A stretch of DNA of 64,000 nucleotides, taken from positions 186,001 to 250,000 of IMG/VR virus record IMGVR_UViG_3300050120_000152; one strand, written 5' to 3'. The notes beneath the pieces are model-generated. The model did not search any database, was not told where the DNA came from, and worked only from the letters and a program-made list of their open reading frames with translations. Below, in pieces: positions 1-8,365 of this stretch. The first letter of the stretch is position 1, and each line of letters opens with the position of its first letter. The translations under genes and the position numbers were made by a program.

Positions 1-37
1 TAATGGATTGTCAACTACTATATTTTAAGAATACTCC

Positions 38-66
38 TTGCAAAGATTGCCCAAAAGGAATATAAT
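38..66 (+). promoter_or_regulatory. sigma70-type early promoter
   Basis: TTGCAA(38-43)-17 bp-TATAAT(61-66). Confidence 0.75.
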
Positions 67-90
67 GCATTACCAAAGAGGAAAATCGTC

Positions 91-249
91 ATGATTACCA
101 TTCGTCGGTTGCATATTTTTGCATTCATTCTGGGATTTGTGCAGATGTGGCATTTTGGTGATGCAGTGGGTTGTCCTACTGCTGATGATAAAATCTGGAA
201 TGATGCATACGAAAATGGTGCTGACATAGCACAACGCTTGCACCATTGA
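91..249 (+). CDS. small hypothetical protein with hydrophobic N-terminus (52 aa)
   Basis: Hand-translated MITIRRLHIFAFILGFVQMW...QRLHH*; AGAGG at 77-81; promoter upstream; below the ORF-track length cutoff. Confidence 0.55.
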   Translation: MITIRRLHIFAFILGFVQMWHFGDAVGCPTADDKIWNDAYENGADIAQRLHH

Positions 250-266
250 TTCAATTCTGTTATAAT
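238..266 (+). promoter_or_regulatory. sigma70-type early promoter
   Basis: TTGCAC-17-TATAAT. Confidence 0.75.
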
Positions 267-290
267 ACACGCATCAAAAGGAGATTCATC

Positions 291-452
291 ATGCCGAATT
301 TTGTAATCCAACATGAATTTGACTTTGAACCGACATATATTGTCAATAAAGATGATGAAGATCAATACATCAAACTCGATGTGAATATTCCGTGGAAAAA
401 TCGGTTGACTGCTGCGGAAAAGATTGCCAAAATTCTTAATGAATTGGAGTAA
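291..452 (+). CDS. small hypothetical protein (53 aa)
   Basis: Track ORF 246..452; ATG at 291 follows an AGGAG RBS. Confidence 0.65.
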   Translation: MPNFVIQHEFDFEPTYIVNKDDEDQYIKLDVNIPWKNRLTAAEKIAKILNELE

Positions 453-457
453 TAATC

Positions 458-628
458 ATGGTCATTCAACTTGCCGAGTATTGTGACAAACGTGCTGAAC
501 TGACGTTTGAAATCCTTGCAAACTCTGCTAACGGCATGTTGGAACCGCAGCGTAGCAGACTGGTGCGTATTCTCAAGCATTGTCAAAAGGTCAAACGGTT
601 TCAGCGTAAACTGACAAAAGTTGCTTGA
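458..628 (+). CDS. small basic hypothetical protein (56 aa)
   Basis: Hand-translated MVIQLAEYCDKRAELTFE...RKLTKVA*; stop lies inside the next TTGACA. Confidence 0.55.
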   Translation: MVIQLAEYCDKRAELTFEILANSANGMLEPQRSRLVRILKHCQKVKRFQRKLTKVA

Positions 629-654
629 CAATCTGAAATATTGTAGGATATAAA
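621..654 (+). promoter_or_regulatory. sigma70-type early promoter
   Basis: TTGCTT-17-TAGGAT or TTGACA(625-630)-18-TATAAA. Confidence 0.6.
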
Positions 655-673
655 TCAACCAAGGAACATTAGC

Positions 674-835
674 ATGGACAACATTCTTCCCGAAATCAAG
701 TATCGTGGATTGTCCTATACGCTGGACAAAGTTGAAAATGGTGTAGTATACTGGACTTGTCTCTATTCACGCCATACGGATCAATGTTCGGTGGATACGT
801 GGAAGTCTGGCTCCCCCTATGAGGAACGCACCTGA
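674..835 (+). CDS. small hypothetical protein (53 aa)
   Basis: MDNILPEIKYRGLSYTLDKVENGVVYW...; AAGGA RBS; TGA overlaps the ATG at 835. Confidence 0.6.
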   Translation: MDNILPEIKYRGLSYTLDKVENGVVYWTCLYSRHTDQCSVDTWKSGSPYEERT

Positions 836-1110
836 TGAAGCCAAAGACCCTGATTTTCATGCTGCTGATGCTATGCATGGGCATAGCTCATGCGGCACAA
901 TCACACGCATCCTTTTCCATATCGGTTATGGTTGTGGACGCATGTGATACGCATGTATCGAATAGTGGCAAGATTGTTGCGCAGTGTTCGGGAAAGAATA
1001 CCGCAGCGCAGCAGGTTATCACGGTCACACCACCAACACCTGAACAGCTGGCGATGTATGGTGTAAGCTATACATCACAGAATGTGAAAGTCGTTACAAT
1101 AACCTACTAA
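835..1110 (+). CDS. secreted mini fimbrial-subunit-like protein
   Basis: Signal peptide MKPKTLIFMLLMLCMGIAHA, ASFSISVMVV strand, Cys pair, C-terminal VVTITY. Confidence 0.6.
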   Translation: MKPKTLIFMLLMLCMGIAHAAQSHASFSISVMVVDACDTHVSNSGKIVAQCSGKNTAAQQVITVTPPTPEQLAMYGVSYTSQNVKVVTITY

Positions 1111-1115
1111 AAAGC

Positions 1116-1144
1116 TTGCTACTAGCATGTGACAATGTTATAAT
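1116..1144 (+). promoter_or_regulatory. sigma70-type early promoter (extended -10)
   Basis: TTGCTA-17-TGtTATAAT. Confidence 0.75.
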
Positions 1145-1172
1145 AATCCCATCATTCAAGGGAAACCCCATC

Positions 1173-1430
1173 ATGTCGAAAGCATACCGTTTTGAAGTGA
1201 TCCCCCATATGGTTTGGAAACATGCCCTTACTGGTGCACAGGCTTCTATCTATGGTGCGTCTCCGCAGGGTGATGATTGGTCTATTGTGGAAGATGGTTT
1301 TACCTTCCGTGACAATCGTTACAATACGGTGGGCAGCTATGGTGTTCGTGATCGGCGCACTGTCGAGGAAATCGAAGGATACCTTACCACGCAATATGGT
1401 TTCGATTGGCGCTTGCAGCATGCACAGTGA
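1173..1430 (+). CDS. hypothetical protein
   Basis: Track ORF 1116..1430; ATG 1173 follows the AAGGGAAA leader. Confidence 0.65.
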   Translation: MSKAYRFEVIPHMVWKHALTGAQASIYGASPQGDDWSIVEDGFTFRDNRYNTVGSYGVRDRRTVEEIEGYLTTQYGFDWRLQHAQ

Positions 1431-1441
1431 TAGGGTATAAT
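1413..1441 (+). promoter_or_regulatory. sigma70-type early promoter
   Basis: TTGCAG-17-TATAAT. Confidence 0.7.
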
Positions 1442-1447
1442 AATACC

Positions 1448-1663
1448 ATGAAAACACTCATTGCCATTCTGCTCTATCTAGTTCTCTTTGCTGTCATGGC
1501 TCAGAGTGGTATGATTACCTTCACTGGTAGAATTTTGGCAAGCAATGGCCCTAGCATCACGACACAATCTGTCGTAACATCCTCAAATATTCCGCTGGTG
1601 AGTTATGCACTGAGTCGTGTACAAGGTAGCTCAGTCCTCATCAAAACCATTACATATCAGTAA
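1448..1663 (+). CDS. secreted mini fimbrial-subunit-like protein
   Basis: Signal peptide MKTLIAILLYLVLFAVMA, SGMITFTGRI (fimbrial-type GxITFTGxI), C-terminal KTITYQ. Confidence 0.6.
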   Translation: MKTLIAILLYLVLFAVMAQSGMITFTGRILASNGPSITTQSVVTSSNIPLVSYALSRVQGSSVLIKTITYQ

Positions 1664-1677
1664 AGCTAAAGTCTTGT

Positions 1678-1780
1678 GCGAGCCTACCTCTTAAAGGATA
1701 GGACAAAGGTGAATTAACACCTGACGGCTACTCAATGCCGTGCTATCTCCAAAGGGTAGCAGCCTGAATTAACAGGTCGC
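1678..1780 (+). ncRNA. candidate multibranch structured RNA (unassigned)
   Basis: Five contiguous hairpins closed by GCGA(1678-81)/TCGC(1777-80); G-U pairs favour the + strand; no ORF. Confidence 0.45.
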
Positions 1781-1787
1781 CATCCAT

Positions 1788-1814
1788 TGCTTCCCATCCA
1801 CATCCCTATTTTAC
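1788..1814. repeat. 27-bp direct repeat, copy 1 (copy 2 at 6666-6692)
   Basis: tgcttcccatccacatccctattttac is identical at both sites. Confidence 0.95.
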
Positions 1815-1837
1815 ATTACATATAATACAATTGTCAA
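1808..1837 (-). promoter_or_regulatory. leftward sigma70-type promoter
   Basis: Minus strand TTGACA-18-TAAAAT. Confidence 0.55.
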
Positions 1838-1860
1838 TAGATATTATAATAAAATAGTTC

Positions 1861-1889
1861 TTGCATTACGGTACATACTTGTTTATAAT
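1861..1889 (+). promoter_or_regulatory. sigma70-type early promoter
   Basis: TTGCAT-17-TATAAT. Confidence 0.75.
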
Positions 1890-1917
1890 GGCTCATCATT
1901 TAATCATGGACACCAGC

Positions 1918-2256
1918 ATGACTCGCAATGAATTACATAAGCTGCTCATCAAATTGCGCACTATGGTTAAGGCTGGTAACTATCCTTCTAACTATAGGAC
2001 TGGTATCTGTGGCAATTTGGACACGTTATGCGAGTTTTACGTATCGCCGTTAGTACGTAAGTATCAGGAATCATGGACATGGTATAGCGGTGATTGGATT
2101 TTTCCTGTTCCTGCTCCTTCAATGTATGATGATACATACATTGATCCTAAAGCTGGTGCTGTAGCTGTGTATATGAATACCCGCAACAAATGGACAGGTG
2201 AATATGGTAAGCTACGCTTGTCGCTGCTGAACCATCTGATTCGGATGACACGATAA
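1918..2256 (+). CDS. hypothetical protein, paralogue of 5431..5718
   Basis: Shared GIC.N, W...SG...PVP and KW.GE.G..RL.LLN.LIR.TR motifs; start chosen by alignment with the paralogue. Confidence 0.7.
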   Translation: MTRNELHKLLIKLRTMVKAGNYPSNYRTGICGNLDTLCEFYVSPLVRKYQESWTWYSGDWIFPVPAPSMYDDTYIDPKAGAVAVYMNTRNKWTGEYGKLRLSLLNHLIRMTR

Positions 2257-2528
2257 TGCATAATATGTTCATGTTCCTTGCTGACATGCTGAACCATTCC
2301 CCTTGGCATGGAATCATCATGATGGTGCTATGGGTCATTCTGTGGTTGTTCTTACTTACCTGTCTGTTTACATGGTTGTCACCGTGGAAGCCAGACCCTG
2401 ATGGTAATCCATATCGCAGGTATTGTAAAGAATGCGGAACAGGTCAGAGTTTATGGGGCCGAACATACAATGATTATACGGAATGGTGTACATTCTTGCC
2501 AGTGCATCCATGCTCAAAAAAGCATTGA
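2256..2528 (+). CDS. membrane protein with C-terminal CxxC
   Basis: Hydrophobic helix followed by CKEC; coupled to the upstream stop. Confidence 0.65.
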   Translation: MHNMFMFLADMLNHSPWHGIIMMVLWVILWLFLLTCLFTWLSPWKPDPDGNPYRRYCKECGTGQSLWGRTYNDYTEWCTFLPVHPCSKKH

Positions 2529-2553
2529 CAATGTTCTAGCATTGTAGGAGAAT
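2525..2553 (+). promoter_or_regulatory. sigma70-type early promoter
   Basis: TTGACA-17-GAGAAT; the -35 contains the upstream TGA stop. Confidence 0.55.
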
Positions 2554-2560
2554 GTTCCTC

Positions 2561-2656
2561 ATGGAAACCTATTTCACTACTGAAGAACTTGCCCAAGCTG
2601 ATGCCATCCGTGCCGAGCTTGAAACCGCTGAATATCTGGACTATTCCCATGCATGA
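2561..2656 (+). CDS. small acidic protein (31 aa)
   Basis: METYFTTEELAQADAIRAELETAEYLDYSHA*; AGGAG upstream; overlaps the next ATG. Confidence 0.5.
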   Translation: METYFTTEELAQADAIRAELETAEYLDYSHA

Positions 2657-2969
2657 TACCCAAAAGAACTGTCGTGATCTGGCTGATCATCTGGAACATA
2701 ACGTAACGGATGCCGAGTATAATCAGAGCAGTTTTCATTGCGAATCTCGTAATACATCTTGTGCGGCTGGTCATGCTGCATGGGTTGGTATCGGTGGTTT
2801 GGTTATGGATGTATATGATGTTCCTTATCATACCGATTTCGTCAATAGTCTCAGTCGTTATGGAAAATCCATTATCACAGTTTTTGGCGAAGATAAACGA
2901 TATATTTTTCATAGTGATAGGGGTGATTTAACTCGATTGGATGCCATTGATTTGCTACGCAAGGCATAA
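2649..2969 (+). CDS. hypothetical protein
   Basis: Track ORF 2589..2969; likely start MHDTQK; FHCESRNTSCAAGHAA motif. Confidence 0.65.
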   Translation: MHDTQKNCRDLADHLEHNVTDAEYNQSSFHCESRNTSCAAGHAAWVGIGGLVMDVYDVPYHTDFVNSLSRYGKSIITVFGEDKRYIFHSDRGDLTRLDAIDLLRKA

Positions 2970-2971
2970 CC

Positions 2972-3070
2972 ATGATTCTCGACGTGAAAGACCTTACTCT
3001 GGATGTGAGCGTGGAGGAAGCTTTAACGCTCATACAGACGCTTACAATCATGCTGGCAGACCCGTCATAA
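2972..3070 (+). CDS. possible 32-aa ORF overlapping hairpins
   Basis: MILDVKDLTLDVSVEEALTLIQTLTIMLADPS*. Confidence 0.35.
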   Translation: MILDVKDLTLDVSVEEALTLIQTLTIMLADPS

Positions 3071-3210
3071 GGGTTATCAGCAAGTCGTTACTCAAACGCT
3101 TCCATTGATCGTACAGGACGGTTCCAAGCCTAATGGGGAACCTCGTTACATGACTGACTCATTTTGCCTGATGATGGAAAACAAAGGTTGACAAGCCTGT
3201 CCATTGGGGA

Positions 3211-3239
3211 TTGACACGGCAGTTTCTTTGTATTAGAAT
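3211..3239 (+). promoter_or_regulatory. sigma70-type early promoter
   Basis: TTGACA-17-TAGAAT. Confidence 0.75.
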
Positions 3240-3266
3240 GCTTGCCTACTATATAAGGATTTTATC

Positions 3267-3671
3267 ATGTTTGAACTCAATGCTGAACATCAAGCTATTG
3301 TCAAAGGCATGCGCGAATGCATGTTGCATGACTTTAAACGTGATGAAGTTTTTTGGAAAATGGTGGAACTCTGCCCATCGGTGTTCATCTTGGCATTGAA
3401 TGGTGGTATCATTCGTGTTGCATGGCCTGTTCATATTGCACCAACCATCGCAGATTTAGCCTCCGTGCCATGTCTGACCGATGGTGAATATAACATGCTG
3501 CGAAACCATTGCCACGCTAAAGATAAAGTCGCAGCCATCAAAGCATTGCGTGCTATGCGTGGCATGGCTTTGAAGGATGCAAAAGATATTGTGGAAGCAT
3601 GGTTCTATGAACCCGATTCAGACTATGGGAATTCATATTGGCGATTGAAACGGGTTCAGCCTGATGAATAG
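3267..3671 (+). CDS. protein with ribosomal L7/L12 C-terminal-like motif
   Basis: KVAAIKALRAMRGMALKDAKDIVE resembles the bL12 CTD (KI.vIK.vR.itglgLkeAKdlVe). Confidence 0.65.
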   Translation: MFELNAEHQAIVKGMRECMLHDFKRDEVFWKMVELCPSVFILALNGGIIRVAWPVHIAPTIADLASVPCLTDGEYNMLRNHCHAKDKVAAIKALRAMRGMALKDAKDIVEAWFYEPDSDYGNSYWRLKRVQPDE

Positions 3672-3849
3672 CATAGGCATGACCAATCTTTTCCTTTATG
3701 TTGGTGTAGGCTTTGCCATCTTTGATGCATTGTTTTTAATCGGTTATCTCTATGGTAATGACAGACGATACGGAACAGGTGCTGTCTGGAGTGGTGGCCT
3801 TGCATTGTTATGCTGGCTCATTGCTGGACTCATTGCATTCTTTACTTGA
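3664..3849 (+). CDS. small two-TM membrane protein
   Basis: Two hydrophobic segments; stop lies in the next TTGACA. Confidence 0.65.
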   Translation: MNSIGMTNLFLYVGVGFAIFDALFLIGYLYGNDRRYGTGAVWSGGLALLCWLIAGLIAFFT

Positions 3850-3875
3850 CAATCGCTGCGGACTTCTATTATAAT
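3846..3875 (+). promoter_or_regulatory. sigma70-type early promoter
   Basis: TTGACA-18-TATAAT. Confidence 0.7.
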
Positions 3876-3903
3876 AGCCTGAATTCCATACTGGATAGTG
3901 ATC

Positions 3904-4002
3904 ATGGCAAAACTTTCGGATAACCCCACGGGTGTTCATATCCTCATGGCTGTCATCGTGGTGTTACTCATCATCCCATTCTGCTGGATGACTGGTGTAT
4001 GA
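3904..4002 (+). CDS. small single-TM protein (32 aa)
   Basis: MAKLSDNPTGVHILMAVIVVLLIIPFCWMTGV*. Confidence 0.5.
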   Translation: MAKLSDNPTGVHILMAVIVVLLIIPFCWMTGV

Positions 4003-4103
4003 GACTGCGCATTTTTCCACATGAAGCTCCTAACAGCAAATGGTCTGAATATACGATCCCTTTGAATAATTTCAAAGAATATATTGACAACGTAATAAAA
4101 TAG
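3999..4103 (+). CDS. small hypothetical protein (34 aa)
   Basis: ATGA overlap with the previous gene; MRLRIFPHEAPNSKWSEYTIP... Confidence 0.45.
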   Translation: MRLRIFPHEAPNSKWSEYTIPLNNFKEYIDNVIK

Positions 4104-4111
4104 GGTATAAT
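4084..4111 (+). promoter_or_regulatory. sigma70-type early promoter
   Basis: TTGACA-16-TATAAT. Confidence 0.7.
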
Positions 4112-4138
4112 AAACCCATCATCAATAGGTGAACTGTC

Positions 4139-4312
4139 ATGAAAGTCAGAGAACTGATTGCCCTACTTCAAACATTCGATCCTGAGCTGGACGTTAACAA
4201 AACGGACAGTGCTGGTTGCAATGAATGTAATGAATTTGGTGACGATCATTTCAACGATATTTATGATGTACGCCTTTATGAGGTCTATCTAGACAAGCTA
4301 GTTGTATTGTAA
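4139..4312 (+). CDS. small phage protein (57 aa)
   Basis: MKVRELIALLQTFDPELDV..., a common small phage protein N-terminus. Confidence 0.65.
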   Translation: MKVRELIALLQTFDPELDVNKTDSAGCNECNEFGDDHFNDIYDVRLYEVYLDKLVVL

Positions 4313-4318
4313 TAGAAT
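4290..4318 (+). promoter_or_regulatory. sigma70-type early promoter
   Basis: TAGACA-17-TAGAAT. Confidence 0.65.
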
Positions 4319-4348
4319 ACTATTATTCCAACCAACTGAGACCATGTG

Positions 4349-4822
4349 ATGACTTCACCAGTTCGCGGGACGCATTATTCTCTCGCTCAATCTCCCGCTG
4401 AGATGTGGCAGAAAGCTGCTGCTATCGCTGCAAAGCTGATCGCTGATGCCAAAGCCCACAAGGCCATTCCGGTGCTGGCTTATACTGGCATGTCTGGGAC
4501 TGCAACGGCAACCGCAGTTTCGTTGTGGCTGGCAACGAAAAAGCCGAGATTCAAATTTTATATGATCTATGTTCGCAAGCCACGCGAAAAATCACATGGA
4601 AGAAAAATCGAACACAATTTCGAGTATGATTTTCTCATTGACGAAAGCATTACCAAAAAGAAATTTTTCATTGCTTTCGTGGATGATCTGATCTGTTCGG
4701 GTGCCACTAGCAAACGTGTACTAGCAAAAATTGCCGCAGAGTGCAAGACCACCAACTACATGCTGTTCACAAAATTGGCTGGTGCCGTGAACAATGAGGG
4801 ATACTGTACCAGCGATTACTAA
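4349..4822 (+). CDS. type I phosphoribosyltransferase-like protein
   Basis: PRPP-loop motif IAFVDDLICSGAT; YTGMSG loop. Confidence 0.7.
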   Translation: MTSPVRGTHYSLAQSPAEMWQKAAAIAAKLIADAKAHKAIPVLAYTGMSGTATATAVSLWLATKKPRFKFYMIYVRKPREKSHGRKIEHNFEYDFLIDESITKKKFFIAFVDDLICSGATSKRVLAKIAAECKTTNYMLFTKLAGAVNNEGYCTSDY

Positions 4823-4831
4823 AAAGAATGC

Positions 4832-4859
4832 TTGACATGGGCTAGAATTCTTTTATAAT
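4832..4859 (+). promoter_or_regulatory. sigma70-type early promoter
   Basis: TTGACA-16-TATAAT. Confidence 0.7.
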
Positions 4860-4890
4860 AGTCCCATACCAACCAACCCGGTCAAGCATC

Positions 4891-5091
4891 ATGATTTTTT
4901 CTACTGATACCAAAGCCTACGTCAATGAATTGTTTGCCGAAACTGCGGCTCATGAAGCGGCATATGCGGAAGCTGGTAATGTGATCATGGTGCCATCGCT
5001 TGAGGTCGAGTTCCCCATCGGTGAATTTCCTTACGATGATGCCGCATTCGAACGCCGTTATCCGCCATCCTATGATGTGGAGTCATTCTGA
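4891..5091 (+). CDS. small acidic hypothetical protein
   Basis: Track ORF directly after a promoter; coupled to 5091. Confidence 0.65.
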   Translation: MIFSTDTKAYVNELFAETAAHEAAYAEAGNVIMVPSLEVEFPIGEFPYDDAAFERRYPPSYDVESF

Positions 5092-5384
5092 TGGCTGTCC
5101 AGTATGAATGGGATGTGGAAACTGTCTCATGGGATGAAATCGACGGTGATCAAGTCATTGATCATTATCACTGTGTGACCTTCAAGGAAGCTCTACAACA
5201 GGCGGCGACAACTCCTGAAGATGGTTGTCGCCATGTTGTCGTGCTGGTGCGTGACGACGTTGCTGGAAGGCTCTGGGCCTATGTGGATGATATTGGTAGA
5301 ATATCGCCCATTTTCAGGGATAGTCAAGATAATGTGGCGATGTTGGTTCCTCAAAAATATCTCAGGGAAGTGTTGACAGCCTGA
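5091..5384 (+). CDS. hypothetical protein
   Basis: Track ORF; TGATG coupling. Confidence 0.7.
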   Translation: MAVQYEWDVETVSWDEIDGDQVIDHYHCVTFKEALQQAATTPEDGCRHVVVLVRDDVAGRLWAYVDDIGRISPIFRDSQDNVAMLVPQKYLREVLTA

Positions 5385-5400
5385 TTCATTCTGTTATAAT
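5373..5400 (+). promoter_or_regulatory. sigma70-type early promoter
   Basis: TTGACA-16-TATAAT. Confidence 0.7.
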
Positions 5401-5430
5401 ACATTCAACCAATCACTGAGAGTATCCACC

Positions 5431-5718
5431 ATGAACCGCAAGACTTATCACATGCGTCTGCTCGCCCTGCATGACTGTGTGAAGGCTGAAGACATTCTTT
5501 ATCCTAATAGAGGCATCTGCTTTAACGTGTCAAGTCTGGGTAAGACAGATTCCGCTGCTTTCAACTTGACGGACAAGTATGCAATGGGTTGGCCGGAACA
5601 TTCAGGCATCACAAACCGCCCTGTACCGTTCGAATATGGCGCTGACCTGAAATGGGTAGGCGAAGAAGGTGCATCGCGTCTGCGACTGCTGAACTATCTC
5701 ATTCGCAAGACGCGCTGA
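5431..5718 (+). CDS. hypothetical protein, paralogue of 1918..2256
   Basis: Shared motifs, see paralogue. Confidence 0.7.
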   Translation: MNRKTYHMRLLALHDCVKAEDILYPNRGICFNVSSLGKTDSAAFNLTDKYAMGWPEHSGITNRPVPFEYGADLKWVGEEGASRLRLLNYLIRKTR

Positions 5719-5722
5719 ATGC

Positions 5723-5751
5723 TTGACAGGATGATATAGTTCTATTAGAAT
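5723..5751 (+). promoter_or_regulatory. sigma70-type early promoter
   Basis: TTGACA-17-TAGAAT. Confidence 0.75.
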
Positions 5752-5782
5752 ACTCCCACACCATCCAACAAGGCTCAAGCCC

Positions 5783-6091
5783 ATGTCCATCCTGAATGCC
5801 ACCATCGCCACCATCGCCACCATCGCCACCATCGCCACCATCGCCTATTGGTTCAGCTTCCGTGGTGAAGATCAAGAAGTGCTGTGCCTGCGCGATGTTA
5901 ACAGCGATGGCCCGTGGCATGATGCCTTTGCCTATATCCATATCGTTACTAACGGCTCCTGCCGTCACGATGATCAACTGTACAACATCATGATGGAGCT
6001 TGCTGACTTGGCTGACAGTGCATCCATCTATGCGCTTGAAATCAGCGGCGACGTGGCCTATAACGAAGCCTATCGTGGGTTGGATGCTTGA
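5783..6091 (+). CDS. N-terminally anchored hypothetical protein with (ATI)n repeat
   Basis: Track ORF; follows a promoter and C/A-rich leader like its neighbours. Confidence 0.65.
   Translation: MSILNATIATIATIATIATIAYWFSFRGEDQEVLCLRDVNSDGPWHDAFAYIHIVTNGSCRHDDQLYNIMMELADLADSASIYALEISGDVAYNEAYRGLDA
5798..5845 (+). repeat. 9-bp tandem repeat (gccaccatc)x5 + gcc
   Basis: Read directly from the sequence. Confidence 0.95.
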
Positions 6092-6116
6092 CACTCTATA
6101 ATAATCCCTGTATACT
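6088..6116 (+). promoter_or_regulatory. sigma70-type early promoter
   Basis: TTGACA-17-TATACT; the -35 contains the upstream stop. Confidence 0.7.
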
Positions 6117-6143
6117 GCACCCATCATCAAGGGGAACTCTGCT

Positions 6144-6317
6144 ATGTCATCTGCCACTGTCGCCTCTCTCACCGCTGGACTGACGCTGTTCGCTATTGAA
6201 CAGTACAATGGTCACTGTAAGGCCGTGTACTCTGATGGACGTAAGCTCATCATCTCCTATGCTGACGCTGCTCGCCTATCTATGGCGCATACCGTTACCA
6301 TCCTCAACAAACGATAG
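6144..6317 (+). CDS. small hypothetical protein (57 aa)
   Basis: MSSATVASLTAGLTLFAIEQYNGHCKAVYSDGRKLII...; AAGGGG RBS. Confidence 0.55.
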   Translation: MSSATVASLTAGLTLFAIEQYNGHCKAVYSDGRKLIISYADAARLSMAHTVTILNKR

Positions 6318-6324
6318 GCCAATT

Positions 6325-6555
6325 ATGCTCACCCTGCTAACTATCTTCTATATCTGTGCTGCATCCTGTGCTATGGGCATACTGTGTGCTACACTGTGTA
6401 TCATCCTTGCCTCTGTCTTCACTGATGACAGACTGACCACTTCCATCCCTCAAGCATTCAAGCATACTGCCAAGCATCTGGGTTATTGGTCAATAGGTAC
6501 AGGCTGTGCTGCTATCGTAGCATATAGCATACTTATGTGTCAATGGTTGACATGA
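6325..6555 (+). CDS. small two-TM membrane protein
   Basis: 3' part of track ORF 6196..6555; two hydrophobic helices. Confidence 0.6.
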   Translation: MLTLLTIFYICAASCAMGILCATLCIILASVFTDDRLTTSIPQAFKHTAKHLGYWSIGTGCAAIVAYSILMCQWLT

Positions 6556-6575
6556 CATAACCTTAGTGCTATGCT
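6547..6575 (+). promoter_or_regulatory. sigma70-type promoter with no downstream ORF
   Basis: TTGACA-17-TGcTATGCT. Confidence 0.6.
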
Positions 6576-6581
6576 TATCAT

Positions 6582-6641
6582 GCGTCACGGGTCACAGTAA
6601 CCAAGAGCCTAGCATATGTTGGCGCATGTGTCTAGGCTTTA
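6582..6641 (+). ncRNA. candidate small RNA ending in a 13-bp hairpin
   Basis: Upstream promoter, then hairpin agcctag-catatg/catgtg-ctaggct (6606-6638) followed by tt. Confidence 0.35.
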
Positions 6642-6665
6642 CTATGTCCTATGCTGTCACTGCTA

Positions 6666-6692
6666 TGCTTCCCATCCACATCCCTATTTTAC
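6666..6692. repeat. 27-bp direct repeat, copy 2
   Basis: Identical to 1788-1814; contains a minus-strand extended -10 TGgTAAAAT. Confidence 0.95.
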
Positions 6693-6699
6693 CATAGCA

Positions 6700-6887
6700 T
6701 AGCTGAACGTACCATGAACAGGCTGGGCTATCGTTCAGCTAGGGTACAGGTAGGGTGTGGTATGCTATACATGCTGAGACAAGTTTAAGTTTTTAATCAA
6801 TTACTTTTTTTATTTAATACAATAGCCCCCTATACCCTAGGCTGAGCCTGAACGTATATCAAATCAATATAAAAATTTTTTTATATT
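6700..6887. repeat. nested inverted repeats around an AT-rich tract
   Basis: tagctgaacg 6700-09 / cgttcagcta 6732-41; taccctag..ctgaacg 6833-54 mirrors 6732-46; aatataaaaa/tttttatatt 6866-87. Confidence 0.75.
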
Positions 6888-6956
6888 TTTATTTCTAGTA
6901 AATAAGTTTTTCATTAATATTATTGTTTACTAAATAGTAGATAATGGTATATAAAT

Positions 6957-7574
6957 ATGAAACATAAAGTAATACATAATTGCAAATGTGGAGAAACTGA
7001 CTCTACCAAATTCTACAAATATAGAACATATGAATGTAAAACTTGTATAAGTAGAAAAAATAAAGATAATTCCAATTCTCGTAGACGATGTAGTTGTGGT
7101 GAATGCGATCCATTAATGTTTTATAAACGAAGATGTAGTAAGTGTAAGAAATGTACTCGTGAAGATAGAAAACAAGAATATAAAAATATAATGTCTGATG
7201 ATGCAAAGCGGCTAACCAAAATAGAATATAATATAGCTTATCAAAAAGCTAATATATTCAAATATAGATTAACATCAGCAAAACGAAGAGCCATGGATTG
7301 GGACAGAGAATTTGATCTTGACGAAAATTATTTAAAGGAATTATTTAAATACCAAAATGGTTGTTGTTGTTATAGTGGAATACCCTTTGATATAGATGAC
7401 AAGAATTTTACATGGTCTATAGATAGAGTAAATAGCGTCAAAGGTTATACTAAAGACAATGTAGTGTTGTGTACTAATATAATGAATATTATGAAAGGTA
7501 GTCTAACTATAGAAGAATTTTTGACTATTAGTAAAAAATTTATAGAATATCAAAATCATATTACAGGCTTTTAG
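6957..7574 (+). CDS. HNH-like homing endonuclease with N-terminal Cys clusters
   Basis: CxC/CxxC repeats; SIDRVNSVKGYTKDNVVLCTNIMNIMKG nuclease motif. Confidence 0.8.
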   Translation: MKHKVIHNCKCGETDSTKFYKYRTYECKTCISRKNKDNSNSRRRCSCGECDPLMFYKRRCSKCKKCTREDRKQEYKNIMSDDAKRLTKIEYNIAYQKANIFKYRLTSAKRRAMDWDREFDLDENYLKELFKYQNGCCCYSGIPFDIDDKNFTWSIDRVNSVKGYTKDNVVLCTNIMNIMKGSLTIEEFLTISKKFIEYQNHITGF

Positions 7575-7694
7575 GCTAATAAAATTTTTTCTGGACAATT
7601 TTTTAGTGTTCGGTTATGATGTATTGACATGACCCTAAAAAATTTTTGGAAAATTAATGTATCTTAAAAGAGAAGATGTATATAAAACTAGTGC

Positions 7695-7712
7695 TGAGAC
7701 AAATTTGTCTCA
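7695..7712. repeat. 18-bp perfect palindrome
   Basis: tgagacaaa|tttgtctca. Confidence 0.9.
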
Positions 7713-7846
7713 ACTGTATACAAAGATTAAAGAATGCGAACAATATTAGAGAAGAATTGTCCCATAGACATATGAACTGGTTGACTAATTGAATTGTAAT
7801 CTGCTACACTTTTGGGGACTATAACTGTTTGGTGAGGAAGATGCCC

Positions 7847-8365
7847 ATGTTTGATTGGTTCAAGAAAGATGATAAGACGAAAGAGTCTAATAAGATAGTC
7901 GTTCCAAAAACATTGCAAGCGAATCAATATTTGGGTAATTATGTTGTAGCAGAATCCCGAGAAATGAGTACGATTATTTATGAGGGCGATGTACAAACAT
8001 GGTTAAAGAGTGGAACCCTGAATGAATTTTTTTATTGTCACGCTAGAATGATGAAAAATATGATCGGTGATTCTTATATTAAAGCATCCGATTCGTGTAT
8101 ATTATTTAATATGCATGATACTAAGGGTAAATCGCAAATGTTCAGATGGAATGCTACTCCATCAGCCGTAACGGGTAATTTATCGTGGTATAATGATATG
8201 CTCGCTCGCGTGGAGGATTTATCAGGTTTACCTATTGAAGAATTTACTCATGGAACCTTTCATTATTTGTCTGATCTGGAAATGAAAGAATTTTTGAATA
8301 AAAATTACGGTTCAACTACATCCGTGTTGTTTAATATGCCTTATGTAGGTATAACATATTTTTAA
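7847..8365 (+). CDS. 'IEEFT' paralogue family member 1
   Basis: WYNDMLARVEDLSGLPIEEFTHGTFHYL; ATG start after GAGGA. Confidence 0.8.
   Translation: MFDWFKKDDKTKESNKIVVPKTLQANQYLGNYVVAESREMSTIIYEGDVQTWLKSGTLNEFFYCHARMMKNMIGDSYIKASDSCILFNMHDTKGKSQMFRWNATPSAVTGNLSWYNDMLARVEDLSGLPIEEFTHGTFHYLSDLEMKEFLNKNYGSTTSVLFNMPYVGITYF

What the first reader, a model, noticed from the sequence alone, without database searches (positions are those of the whole stretch)
1788..6714. Identical 27-bp element marks two leftward (antisense) promoters, each next to a structured region
Seen: tgcttcccatccacatccctattttac occurs at 1788-1814 and 6666-6692. On the minus strand it reads -10 TAAAAT followed by AGGGATGTGGATGGGAAGCA. 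Copy 1 has TTGACA 18 bp upstream and copy 2 has an extended TGn -10. Neither is followed by a convincing ORF, and both point back over hairpin-rich non-coding DNA, against all early genes. Inference: two RNAs with an identical purine-rich 5' end acting as antisense or regulatory RNAs or as replication primers, or a recombination site flanking a 4.9-kb module.
Basis: partly seen in the sequence, partly recalled or inferred. Interest (0 to 1): 0.6.

Follow-up and report, generated by a model that had tools for sequence, protein, structure and literature searches.

The report
Inward-pointing promoter repeats in phage early island
The two identical 27-bp sequences belong to a family of at least nine conserved promoter-plus-start-site modules that sit at operon boundaries of the early-gene island of an uncultured 340-kb phage and, in three diverged relatives alike, all point toward the island's centre, so that the two copies in this window fire against the early genes.

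Summary
In detail: the 27-mer is exact at 1788-1814 and 6666-6692, and no shuffle produced two matches. It is not a pair, though. The 340-kb phage genome holds at least 9 copies, all inside a 30-kb island of raised G+C (genome 163-193 kb). The window covers the last 6.8 kb of that island.

Two diverged relatives and several short contigs carry the same core, TAAAATAG-RGTNGY-GGATGGG, although the flanking DNA no longer aligns.

Each also has a TTGACA-like -35, an extended TGn, or a tandem TTCAG box. An invariant G lies 7 nt downstream. This either/or pattern supports real host-type promoters.

The 27-mer is therefore the -10 plus the first ~14 transcribed bases. I found no conserved ORF, no Rfam family and no conserved 5' RNA fold.

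In all three genomes the left-hand copies point right, with the genes, and the right-hand copies point left, against them. The outermost copies sit at the island edges.

Best reading: composite terminator/promoter modules that launch inward transcription and give non-coding antisense RNAs over the immediate-early operons. No RNA data exist. The recombination-module reading has no support. The function of the conserved start region is still open.

The parts
1788..1814 (-). Copy 1 of the 27-mer: -10 TAAAAT (1813-1808), discriminator AGGGAT, predicted start G at 1801, then the first ~14 transcribed bases
1815..1837 (-). Class-A upstream half of copy 1: conserved spacer and -35 TTGACA (1837-1832), 18-nt spacing
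   Evidence: the same 29-30 nt promoter occurs at genome 175489, 178929, 183811 and 185986
1797..1826 (+). Overlapping promoter-like site on the opposite strand (TCCACA-18-TATAAT, 10/12). It is present only in class-A copies and would fire toward the next + gene
   Evidence: function not tested
1664..1787 (.). Non-coding spacer between the + gene ending at 1663 and copy 1. It has five hairpins, two of them with the same GAAUUAAC loop, and folds better as + strand RNA
6666..6692 (-). Copy 2 of the 27-mer: -10 TAAAAT (6691-6686), predicted start G at 6679
6693..6720 (-). Class-B upstream half of copy 2: extended -10 TGG (6695-6693) and a tandem TTCA box (6701-6720) in place of a -35
6606..6638 (+). 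Terminator-like hairpin of the last + operon of the island. The copy-2 RNA would enter it from the reverse side about 40 nt after its start
6731..6766 (+). Outward-facing TTCAG-box promoter (tandem box, TGG, TATGCT), back to back with copy 2. It points into the low-GC genes right of the island
   Evidence: G+C drops at about 6780
1..14 (-). The -35 end of a third, diverged class-A copy. Its -10 and start region lie just left of the window (genome 185976-186001)

Best explanation
The 27-mer is the core of a repeated promoter module read by the host RNA polymerase: a sigma-70-type -10 (TAAAAT), a fixed discriminator and a fixed initial transcribed sequence (RNA 5' end G-Y-GGAUGGG-RRR).

RNA polymerase is recruited by one of three interchangeable upstream parts:
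- a consensus -35;
- an extended -10 (TGn);
- a tandem TTCAG box, which probably binds an activator.

The modules sit just after operon terminators in the phage's early-gene island, and all face the island centre. In the left half they lie in tandem upstream of ordinary early promoters and read with the genes. In the right half, which includes this window, they read back into the preceding + operon. There they would give either short (about 50-65 nt) non-coding RNAs that stop at the reverse face of bidirectional terminators, or longer antisense transcripts.

Shown:
- sequence conservation of the core;
- promoter anatomy;
- placement next to terminators;
- the polar layout in three genomes.

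Inferred:
- that the modules fire at all;
- that their job is to oppose or insulate the strong immediate-early operons (collision, promoter competition, double-stranded RNA), possibly as one arm of an early-to-middle switch driven by the TTCAG-box factor;
- that the conserved start region is a protein or polymerase recognition site rather than an RNA fold.
For: Family size and location:
- There are 9 or more copies, all in the 163-193 kb island of raised G+C.

Conservation in relatives:
- The core is found in a 350-kb relative (IMGVR_UViG_3300048854_000081), in a 32.8-kb contig (Ga0335083_10001443) and in three shorter contigs.
- The flanking DNA does not align, and shared island proteins are mostly 27-56% identical (two reach ~73%).
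- In the central segments the core is the only strongly conserved stretch (22-29 nt at 95-100%).

Promoter anatomy:
- In the 32-copy alignment the only freely variable position is -1, followed by an invariant G.
- Every copy has a -35, a TGn or a TTCAG box.
- TTCAG boxes also precede plain TGnTATAAT promoters of + genes in the relatives, so they are a genuine promoter part.

Layout:
- G000 reads 3 rightward, 2 leftward, 1 rightward, 3 leftward.
- G001 reads 4 rightward then 7 leftward.
- The contig reads 5 rightward then 5 leftward.
- The outermost copies sit at the G+C boundaries.
- Two copies are syntenic in all three genomes.

Context:
- Island genes are on the + strand by promoter/RBS reading and by codon score.
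- Canonical terminators in the island cluster beside the modules.
- TATAAATA is enriched 13-fold upstream of non-island genes, which fits a T4-like programme using host polymerase throughout.
Against: - There is no transcript evidence of any kind. Only three DNA metagenome runs hold the sequence.
- Why about 20 nt around and after the start is conserved is unexplained. There is no conserved ORF: mini-ORFs starting at the internal ATG run 2 to 117 codons. There is no Rfam match. There is no excess 5'-end pairing (mean z 0.23).
- Only about half of the leftward copies meet a hairpin with a usable U-run, so RNA lengths are uncertain.
- Class-A copies have a consensus -35 and so need no activator, which weakens a simple temporal-switch story.
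- One G000 copy (genome 185181) breaks the polarity rule.
- The three genomes are related, so the shared layout is partly inherited.
Confidence: 0.45

Rival explanations
1. The modules are chiefly recombination cassettes like the PeSLs of T4-type phages. In this reading, conserved terminator/promoter composites provide short homologies at which early-gene cassettes are swapped, lost or gained, and any promoter activity is ordinary.
For: - The modules are composite terminator + promoter units, repeated with 27-50 bp identity inside a hyperplastic region of small ORFs.
- Gene content of the right half is almost unrelated between the three genomes, while the modules persist.
- PeSLs are described as such composites in T4-like phages (PMC4122927, PMC2839356).
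Against: - The core is conserved between genomes whose flanks no longer align, which homology-driven exchange within one lineage does not require.
- Half the copies are inverted relative to the genes, yet no gene block is inverted.
- No deletion or rearranged form was seen in three metagenomes. This is weak evidence, because only contigs were available.
- The idea does not explain the polar layout.
Confidence: 0.15
2. The shared purine-rich 5' end is the seed of a multicopy family of trans-acting small RNAs, each ending at a terminator hairpin. These would pair with pyrimidine-rich targets in host or phage mRNAs.
For: - The architecture resembles a small RNA: identical 5' end, variable body, terminal hairpin. 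Examples are genome 178934 and 185996, and several G001 copies.
- The 5' end is not sequestered in a conserved fold.
Against: - Rightward copies run straight into promoters and genes with no terminator.
- Only about half of the leftward copies have a U-run.
- A G-rich seed does not target ribosome-binding sites. Within the phage genome, the 10-nt seed core (GGATGGGAAG) has exact complements only in the oppositely oriented modules.
- The host is unknown, so targets cannot be searched.
Confidence: 0.1
3. The modules are R-loop replication origins or primer promoters of the T4 ori(uvsY)/ori(34) type. A regulated promoter makes a G-rich RNA that stays hybridised to the C-rich template strand and primes leading-strand synthesis.
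For: - The phage has T4-like replication genes and T4-like late promoters.
- An activator-type box sits upstream, and the first transcribed bases are G-rich on the non-template strand. That this favours stable RNA:DNA hybrids is established knowledge, not tested here.
Against: - Nine to eleven origins within 30 kb is unlike any known case.
- No conserved unwinding element was noted downstream of the core (visual reading, not measured).
- G+C skew follows gene strand only and marks no origin.
- The idea does not explain why the modules sit at terminators.
Confidence: 0.08
4. The functional strand is the one as written. In this reading the 27-mer is itself a promoter (-33 to -7) of T4 middle type, with a MotA-like box TGCTTCC, 12 bp, then TATTTT. 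The window copies would then be sense promoters for the next + genes.
For: - In G000 the spacing and box resemble the T4 MotA-box rule, recalled from memory.
- Under this reading the edge copies would drive the outward-flanking genes.
- Class-A copies also carry TCCACA-18-TATAAT on this strand.
Against: - TGCTTC is not conserved in the relatives, where the corresponding bases vary.
- The genome gives no hit to the MotA activation domain, the MotA C-terminal domain, AsiA or sigma-70 region 2.
- The parts conserved on the other strand (-35, TGn, TTCAG box) would be left unexplained.
Confidence: 0.05
5. The G-rich core is a polar DNA signal read by a translocase, a nuclease or a fork barrier, comparable to KOPS, Chi or Ter sites. 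Such a signal must converge on a point in the island, and the promoter resemblance would be secondary.
For: - The convergent polarity does not follow gene strand and recurs in three genomes.
- The core is a G-rich asymmetric motif.
Against: - The -10 hexamer, the invariant start G and the mutually substituting upstream promoter parts are co-conserved with the core, which a pure DNA signal does not need.
- Copies are confined to 30 kb of a 340-kb genome.
Confidence: 0.05

Closest known systems
PeSLs (promoter-early stem-loops) of T4-type phages (Arbiol et al. 2010, PMC2839356; Comeau et al. 2014, PMC4122927)
   Same: - Both are short, conserved composite terminator + early-promoter sequences.
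- Both are repeated many times.
- Both lie between small ORFs in a hyperplastic early region of a large T4-related myovirus-type genome.
   Different: - Here the conserved part extends about 14-20 nt into the transcript.
- Half the copies are inverted against the genes.
- The orientation is polar about the island centre.
- The core is conserved across relatives whose flanks do not align.
- A role in cassette shuffling was not shown.
Phage cis-antisense promoters (lambda oop and paQ, P22 sar)
   Same: A sigma-70 promoter is placed convergent to an early transcription unit and gives a short non-coding RNA that overlaps the 3' end or terminator region.
   Different: - Those are single-copy, each with its own sequence.
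- Here a multicopy family shares one start module.
- The family is also used in sense orientation, and overlap with the target mRNAs is unproven.
T4 middle promoters (MotA box + sigma-70 -10)
   Same: - Both have a -35-less promoter with an upstream box about 10-11 nt before a sigma-70 -10, often with TGn.
- Both occur in a phage that also uses TATAAATA late promoters.
   Different: - The box here is a tandem TTCAG repeat, not TGCTTtA.
- No MotA or AsiA homologue was detected.
- T4 middle promoters have no conserved initial transcribed sequence.
Polar chromosomal motifs (KOPS, Chi, Ter)
   Same: Both are asymmetric G-rich motifs whose two orientation groups converge on a point.
   Different: - The motif here is embedded in complete promoters.
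- It is restricted to a 30-kb region.
- No cognate protein is known.

Membership tests
Sigma-70-type bacterial promoter | -10 hexamer TAnnnT | tested here: met
   TAAAAT in 31 of 32 copies and TAAGAT in one. The regex partly fixes this, but the nhmmer profile search recovered most of the same copies (those with an intact core; several diverged ones were missed).
Sigma-70-type bacterial promoter | -35 hexamer at 16-18 nt, or an extended -10 TGn, or an activator site in its place | tested here: met
   Class A has TTGACA/TTTACA/TTGACC at 17-18 nt. Class B has TGn and/or a tandem TTCAG box. No copy lacks all three.
Sigma-70-type bacterial promoter | Purine start about 7 nt after the -10 | tested here: met
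   An invariant G lies at the 7th base and is preceded by the only freely variable column.
Sigma-70-type bacterial promoter | A mapped transcription start | not testable with these tools
   No RNA run holds the sequence.
T4 MotA-dependent middle promoter (27-mer strand as written) | MotA box TGCTT(t/c)A about 12 bp upstream of the -10 | tested here: not met
   A similar box is present in G000 copies, but it is not conserved in the relatives.
T4 MotA-dependent middle promoter (27-mer strand as written) | MotA and AsiA encoded by the phage | tested here: not met
   PF09114, PF09158 and PF09010 gave no hit at E <= 1 in the 340-kb genome. Very diverged homologues cannot be excluded.
PeSL (T4-type promoter-early stem-loop) | Composite of a terminator stem-loop and an early promoter, repeated in a hyperplastic region | tested here: met
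   Terminator hairpins lie directly beside the modules at genome 176374/176510, 178868/178934, 185136/185181 and 185904/185996.
PeSL (T4-type promoter-early stem-loop) | Promoter co-oriented with the flanking genes | tested here: not met
   Five of nine G000 copies, and all right-half copies in the relatives, are antisense to the + genes.
PeSL (T4-type promoter-early stem-loop) | Indel or replacement endpoints between close relatives fall at the elements | tested here: inconclusive
   The only near-identical sequences (runs X2, X3) are low-depth contigs showing no rearrangement. The available relatives are too diverged to define endpoints.
cis-antisense RNA | Promoter convergent with a coding unit and a transcript overlapping it | tested here: inconclusive
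   Convergence is shown. Overlap depends on read-through of reversed terminators, and only about half of these have a U-run.
Any described RNA family (Rfam 15) | Covariance-model match at or near the gathering score | tested here: not met
   No hit was found over the modules or their downstream 150 nt, either at the gathering score or at E <= 1.
T4-type R-loop origin | Regulated promoter followed by a DNA unwinding element that supports initiation | not tested
   Only the promoter part can be seen. No assay for unwinding or initiation is available here.

The most novel reading that the evidence does not exclude
The modules are the working parts of a previously undescribed temporal switch. In this reading a single promoter class carries a fixed start-site signal that makes the polymerase, or its transcript, special (for example terminator-resistant or factor-loaded). 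It is laid out so that inward transcription from the operon boundaries turns on the left (delayed) half of the early island in sense, and simultaneously silences the right (immediate-early) half in antisense.
Probability: 0.15. Interest if true: 0.8.

Novelty: new variant of a known kind. Interest (0 to 1): 0.55.

Why it matters
Jumbo phages that rely on the host polymerase must switch off a block of very strong early promoters, and for uncultured lineages nothing is known about how they do it. This work identifies a compact, strongly conserved signal: a -10, a fixed start region and interchangeable recruiting parts. Its placement rule, pointing inward from operon boundaries, survives while nearly all surrounding sequence and gene content turns over.

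If the modules fire as predicted, they give three things:
- a directly testable case of programmed antisense or convergent transcription in phage gene timing;
- a new activator-box promoter class (the tandem TTCAG box);
- a defined 20-nt start region whose recognition partner can be sought.

If they do not fire, the polar layout itself still needs another explanation.

Tried and rejected
- **Cultured phages:** megablast of window 1-8000 found nothing. A 63-nt module query gave only chance hits.
- **IMG/VR with the long pattern:** the pattern including GAAGCA gave 0 hits. The shorter core pattern was needed.
- **Island proteins as probes for relatives:** the 242-aa island protein found none. 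Topoisomerase II found only distant relatives at 36% identity or less.
- **Chance hits set aside:** L090, L096, L097 and L099 from the metagenome scan lack any promoter context.
- **Peptide-leader idea, rejected:** ORFs starting at the internal ATG vary from 2 to 117 codons, and the upstream ATG is not conserved.
- **Conserved 5' stem idea, rejected:** pairing of bases 1-8 is no higher than in shuffles (mean z 0.23).
- **Repeated hairpin loop near copy 1 as a general signal, rejected:** the GAAUUAAC loop is unique to that spacer.
- **Complement of the seed elsewhere in the genome or in the GOLLD RNA:** no exact complement of the 10-nt seed core lies outside the oppositely oriented modules, and none was noted in the GOLLD RNA.
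- **Conserved non-coding RNA in the island centre:** none is alignable between genomes.
- **Deletion form lacking 1815-6665, rejected:** contig joints are 32-38-nt matches belonging to other copies.
- **G+C skew as a replication marker:** it follows gene strand only.
- **Rho-utilisation reading of the C-rich strand, rejected:** it leaves the -10 and upstream parts unexplained and fails for the rightward copies.
- **Coverage gap:** part of contig Ga0335083_10001443 (17770-23420) was not fetched, so copies there are unknown.


Full report
**Observation**

The 27-mer is present exactly at window 1788-1814 and 6666-6692. No further match with up to 3 mismatches exists in the window, and none of 100 shuffles gave two matches. 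Read on the minus strand:
- Copy 1 is TTGACA, 18 nt, TAAAAT. It is the best minus-strand promoter-like site in 1-7000, scoring 11 of 12.
- Copy 2 is TGG-TAAAAT without a -35.

All well-supported genes of 1-6600 are on the + strand, each behind its own TTGACA/TATAAT promoter and ribosome-binding site. No plausible minus-strand ORF follows either copy. So the description is right.

**Context**

The window is bases 186001-250000 of a 340,344-bp virus record with terminal repeats. The genome is about 33% G+C, but a 30-kb stretch (genome 163.1-192.8 kb) is 38-45% G+C. The drop at window position ~6780 is sharp.

The phage is T4-like in several respects:
- It carries topoisomerase II and NrdA.
- TATAAATA is enriched 13-fold upstream of genes outside the island.
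- No sigma-70 region 2 (PF04542) hit was found in the genome; phage RNA-polymerase families were not searched. Host RNA polymerase is therefore probably used throughout.

No cultured phage is close; the best topoisomerase identity is 42%. The DNA occurs in three peat metagenomes, and no RNA run holds it.

**The family**

The genome holds six copies with 2 or fewer mismatches and at least three more diverged ones, all inside the island.

| Promoter direction | Genome positions |
|---|---|
| Rightward | 163144, 175512, 176510, 185181 |
| Leftward | 178934, 183816, 185996, 187813 (window copy 1), 192691 (window copy 2) |

The 185996 copy has its -35 in window bases 1-14.

Two kinds of upstream half exist:
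- **Class A:** a conserved 29-30-nt promoter with a consensus -35.
- **Class B:** an extended -10 and a tandem TTCAG-like box ending 10-11 nt before the -10. A terminator-like hairpin often sits just before it.

**Relatives**

A scan for the 21-nt core found several sequences:
- a 32.8-kb metagenome contig (Ga0335083_10001443);
- three short contigs;
- a 350-kb IMG/VR genome (IMGVR_UViG_3300048854_000081).

Outside the core the DNA does not align. Shared island proteins are mostly 27-56% identical; the GP88-family protein reaches ~73%. In the island centres the core is the only strongly conserved stretch, 22-29 nt at 95-100%. That is strong purifying selection on the module.

The 32-copy alignment gives TAAAATAG, RGTNGY, GGATGGG, then three purines. 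The one freely variable column is immediately followed by an invariant G, seven bases after the -10, which is the expected start. Every copy carries a -35-like hexamer, a TGn or the TTCAG box.

In the relatives the same TTCAG box also stands 10 nt upstream of ordinary TGnTATAAT promoters of + genes. It is therefore a promoter part in its own right, most simply an activator site. This mutual substitution of recruiting parts is what real promoters show. It is not expected of a mere DNA-binding site or an RNA motif.

The 27-mer of the finding is therefore the -10, the discriminator and about the first 14 transcribed bases.

**Layout**

The pattern is the same in all three genomes: rightward copies on the left, leftward copies on the right.

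| Genome | Order of copies |
|---|---|
| G000 | 3 rightward, 2 leftward, 1 rightward, 3 leftward |
| 350-kb relative | 4 rightward, then 7 leftward |
| 32.8-kb contig | 5 rightward, then 5 leftward (5.6 kb not fetched) |

- The outermost copies sit at the G+C boundaries and point inward.
- A perfect split has a chance probability of about 2/330 for the relative and 2/252 for the contig. These figures are my own arithmetic.
- The genes of the whole island are on the + strand, by promoter/RBS reading and by a codon log-odds score in the relative. Polarity therefore follows position in the island, not gene strand.
- Two copies are syntenic in all three genomes: the last rightward copy after a conserved 242-aa gene, and the first leftward copy after a conserved 94-aa gene.
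- Canonical terminators in the island lie next to the modules. Each module is thus part of a terminator/promoter composite at an operon boundary.

**What the RNAs would look like**

- **Rightward copies** run within 30-60 nt into an ordinary early promoter and its gene, as tandem promoters.
- **Leftward copies** meet the reverse face of the preceding operon's terminator 25-40 nt after the start. About half of these hairpins are followed by a short U-run, giving 50-65-nt RNAs. The rest would read on as antisense.
- **Window copy 1** meets no terminator. It crosses a 124-nt spacer whose five hairpins fold better on the + strand (z -3.0) than on the minus strand (z -1.6).
- **Window copy 2** enters the last + terminator-like hairpin of the island; z is about -1 on both strands.

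Nothing explains the conserved start region at the RNA level:
- No conserved ORF starts in the module.
- No Rfam family matches.
- The 5' end is not paired more often than in shuffled controls.

The conserved start region therefore acts as primary sequence, whether as duplex DNA, as non-template strand in the open complex, or as single-stranded RNA.

**Interpretation**

I take the modules to be host-polymerase promoters with a fixed start module, arranged to transcribe inward. In the right half, where the strongest consensus early promoters are packed, this transcription is antisense or stops as short non-coding RNA. It is placed back to back with the next + promoter. Its most likely effect is to oppose read-through and expression of the immediate-early operons.

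In the left half the same modules add an upstream sense promoter. That half also holds tRNAs and a GOLLD RNA.

In the two relatives most modules (and in G000 four of nine) use the TTCAG box, and in the relatives the box also drives sense genes of the left half. A factor acting on that box could therefore raise left-half expression and right-half antisense transcription together. This step is inference. Class-A copies, with their consensus -35, do not need such a factor.

**Alternatives**

- **MotA-like reading of the written strand:** this fails. The box is not conserved in the relatives, and no MotA or AsiA is found.
- **Recombination-module reading:** there is no direct support. Contig joints are just other copies of the repeat. 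A PeSL-like evolutionary role (PMC4122927) remains compatible as a secondary property.
- **Others not excluded:** R-loop priming, a trans-acting seed family and a polar DNA signal each leave more of the anatomy unexplained.

**Verdict**

This is a real, strongly conserved regulatory repeat. The conserved inward polarity is the unusual feature. Function is unproven for lack of any RNA data.

Noticed in passing
outside the window: genome 167267-167682 (+) = L007:7267-7682: A full-length match to GOLLD RNA (RF02032): 149.7 bits against a gathering score of 150, E 6e-40. It lies in the left half of the same island, near tRNA-Leu(taa), tRNA-Pro(tgg) and an odd tRNA (genome 164524, 165372, 165789). 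A tRNA-Ile-like gene lies at 181716.
   Followed up: partly
window 1-6780 versus 6781-64000: The early-gene island is 41-49% G+C, against 28-38% for the rest of the window, with a sharp break at about 6780. The same raised-G+C island is seen in both relatives.
   Followed up: partly
window 1664-1787 (+): A 124-nt non-coding spacer with five hairpins (z -3.0 as + strand RNA). Two hairpins carry the same loop, GAAUUAAC, on swapped stems, and this loop-in-hairpin occurs nowhere else in the genome. No Rfam match and no tRNA call.
   Followed up: partly
window 6731-6766 (+) and relatives (L103, L104, L089, L093): A tandem TTCAGS-N4-RTTCAG box lies 10-11 nt upstream of a -10 and defines a separate promoter class. 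In the relatives it drives + genes with very short leaders. In the window one such promoter points out of the island, back to back with copy 2.
   Followed up: partly
window 5798-5840, inside ORF 5783-6091: A 9-bp tandem repeat (CCATCGCCA, about four units) lies in an early gene. A second peat metagenome shows a 9-bp loss and 3-bp gains there, and assembly contigs break at it.
   Followed up: no
window 3267-3671 (+) and 4349-4822 (+): One small early protein has a match to the C-terminal domain of ribosomal protein L7/L12 (27.9 bits, cut-off 25.9). Another has a weak phosphoribosyltransferase-like match, below the cut-off.
   Followed up: no
whole genome outside 163-193 kb: TATAAATA is enriched 13-fold in upstream regions (23 seen, 1.7 expected), which is a T4-type late promoter. 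No sigma-70 region 2, MotA or AsiA domain was detected.
   Followed up: partly
window 6957-7574 (+): The first gene after the G+C drop is a 205-aa, cysteine-rich, very AT-rich ORF with no Pfam match. Homing-endonuclease-like HNH genes occur elsewhere in the island (genome 171310-171741).
   Followed up: no
genome 172346-173098 (+) = L007:12346-13098: The best-conserved island protein (72-74% identity to both relatives) belongs to Pfam GP88 / phrog_1617, of unknown function. In both relatives, but not in this genome, a rightward module stands directly upstream of it.
   Followed up: no
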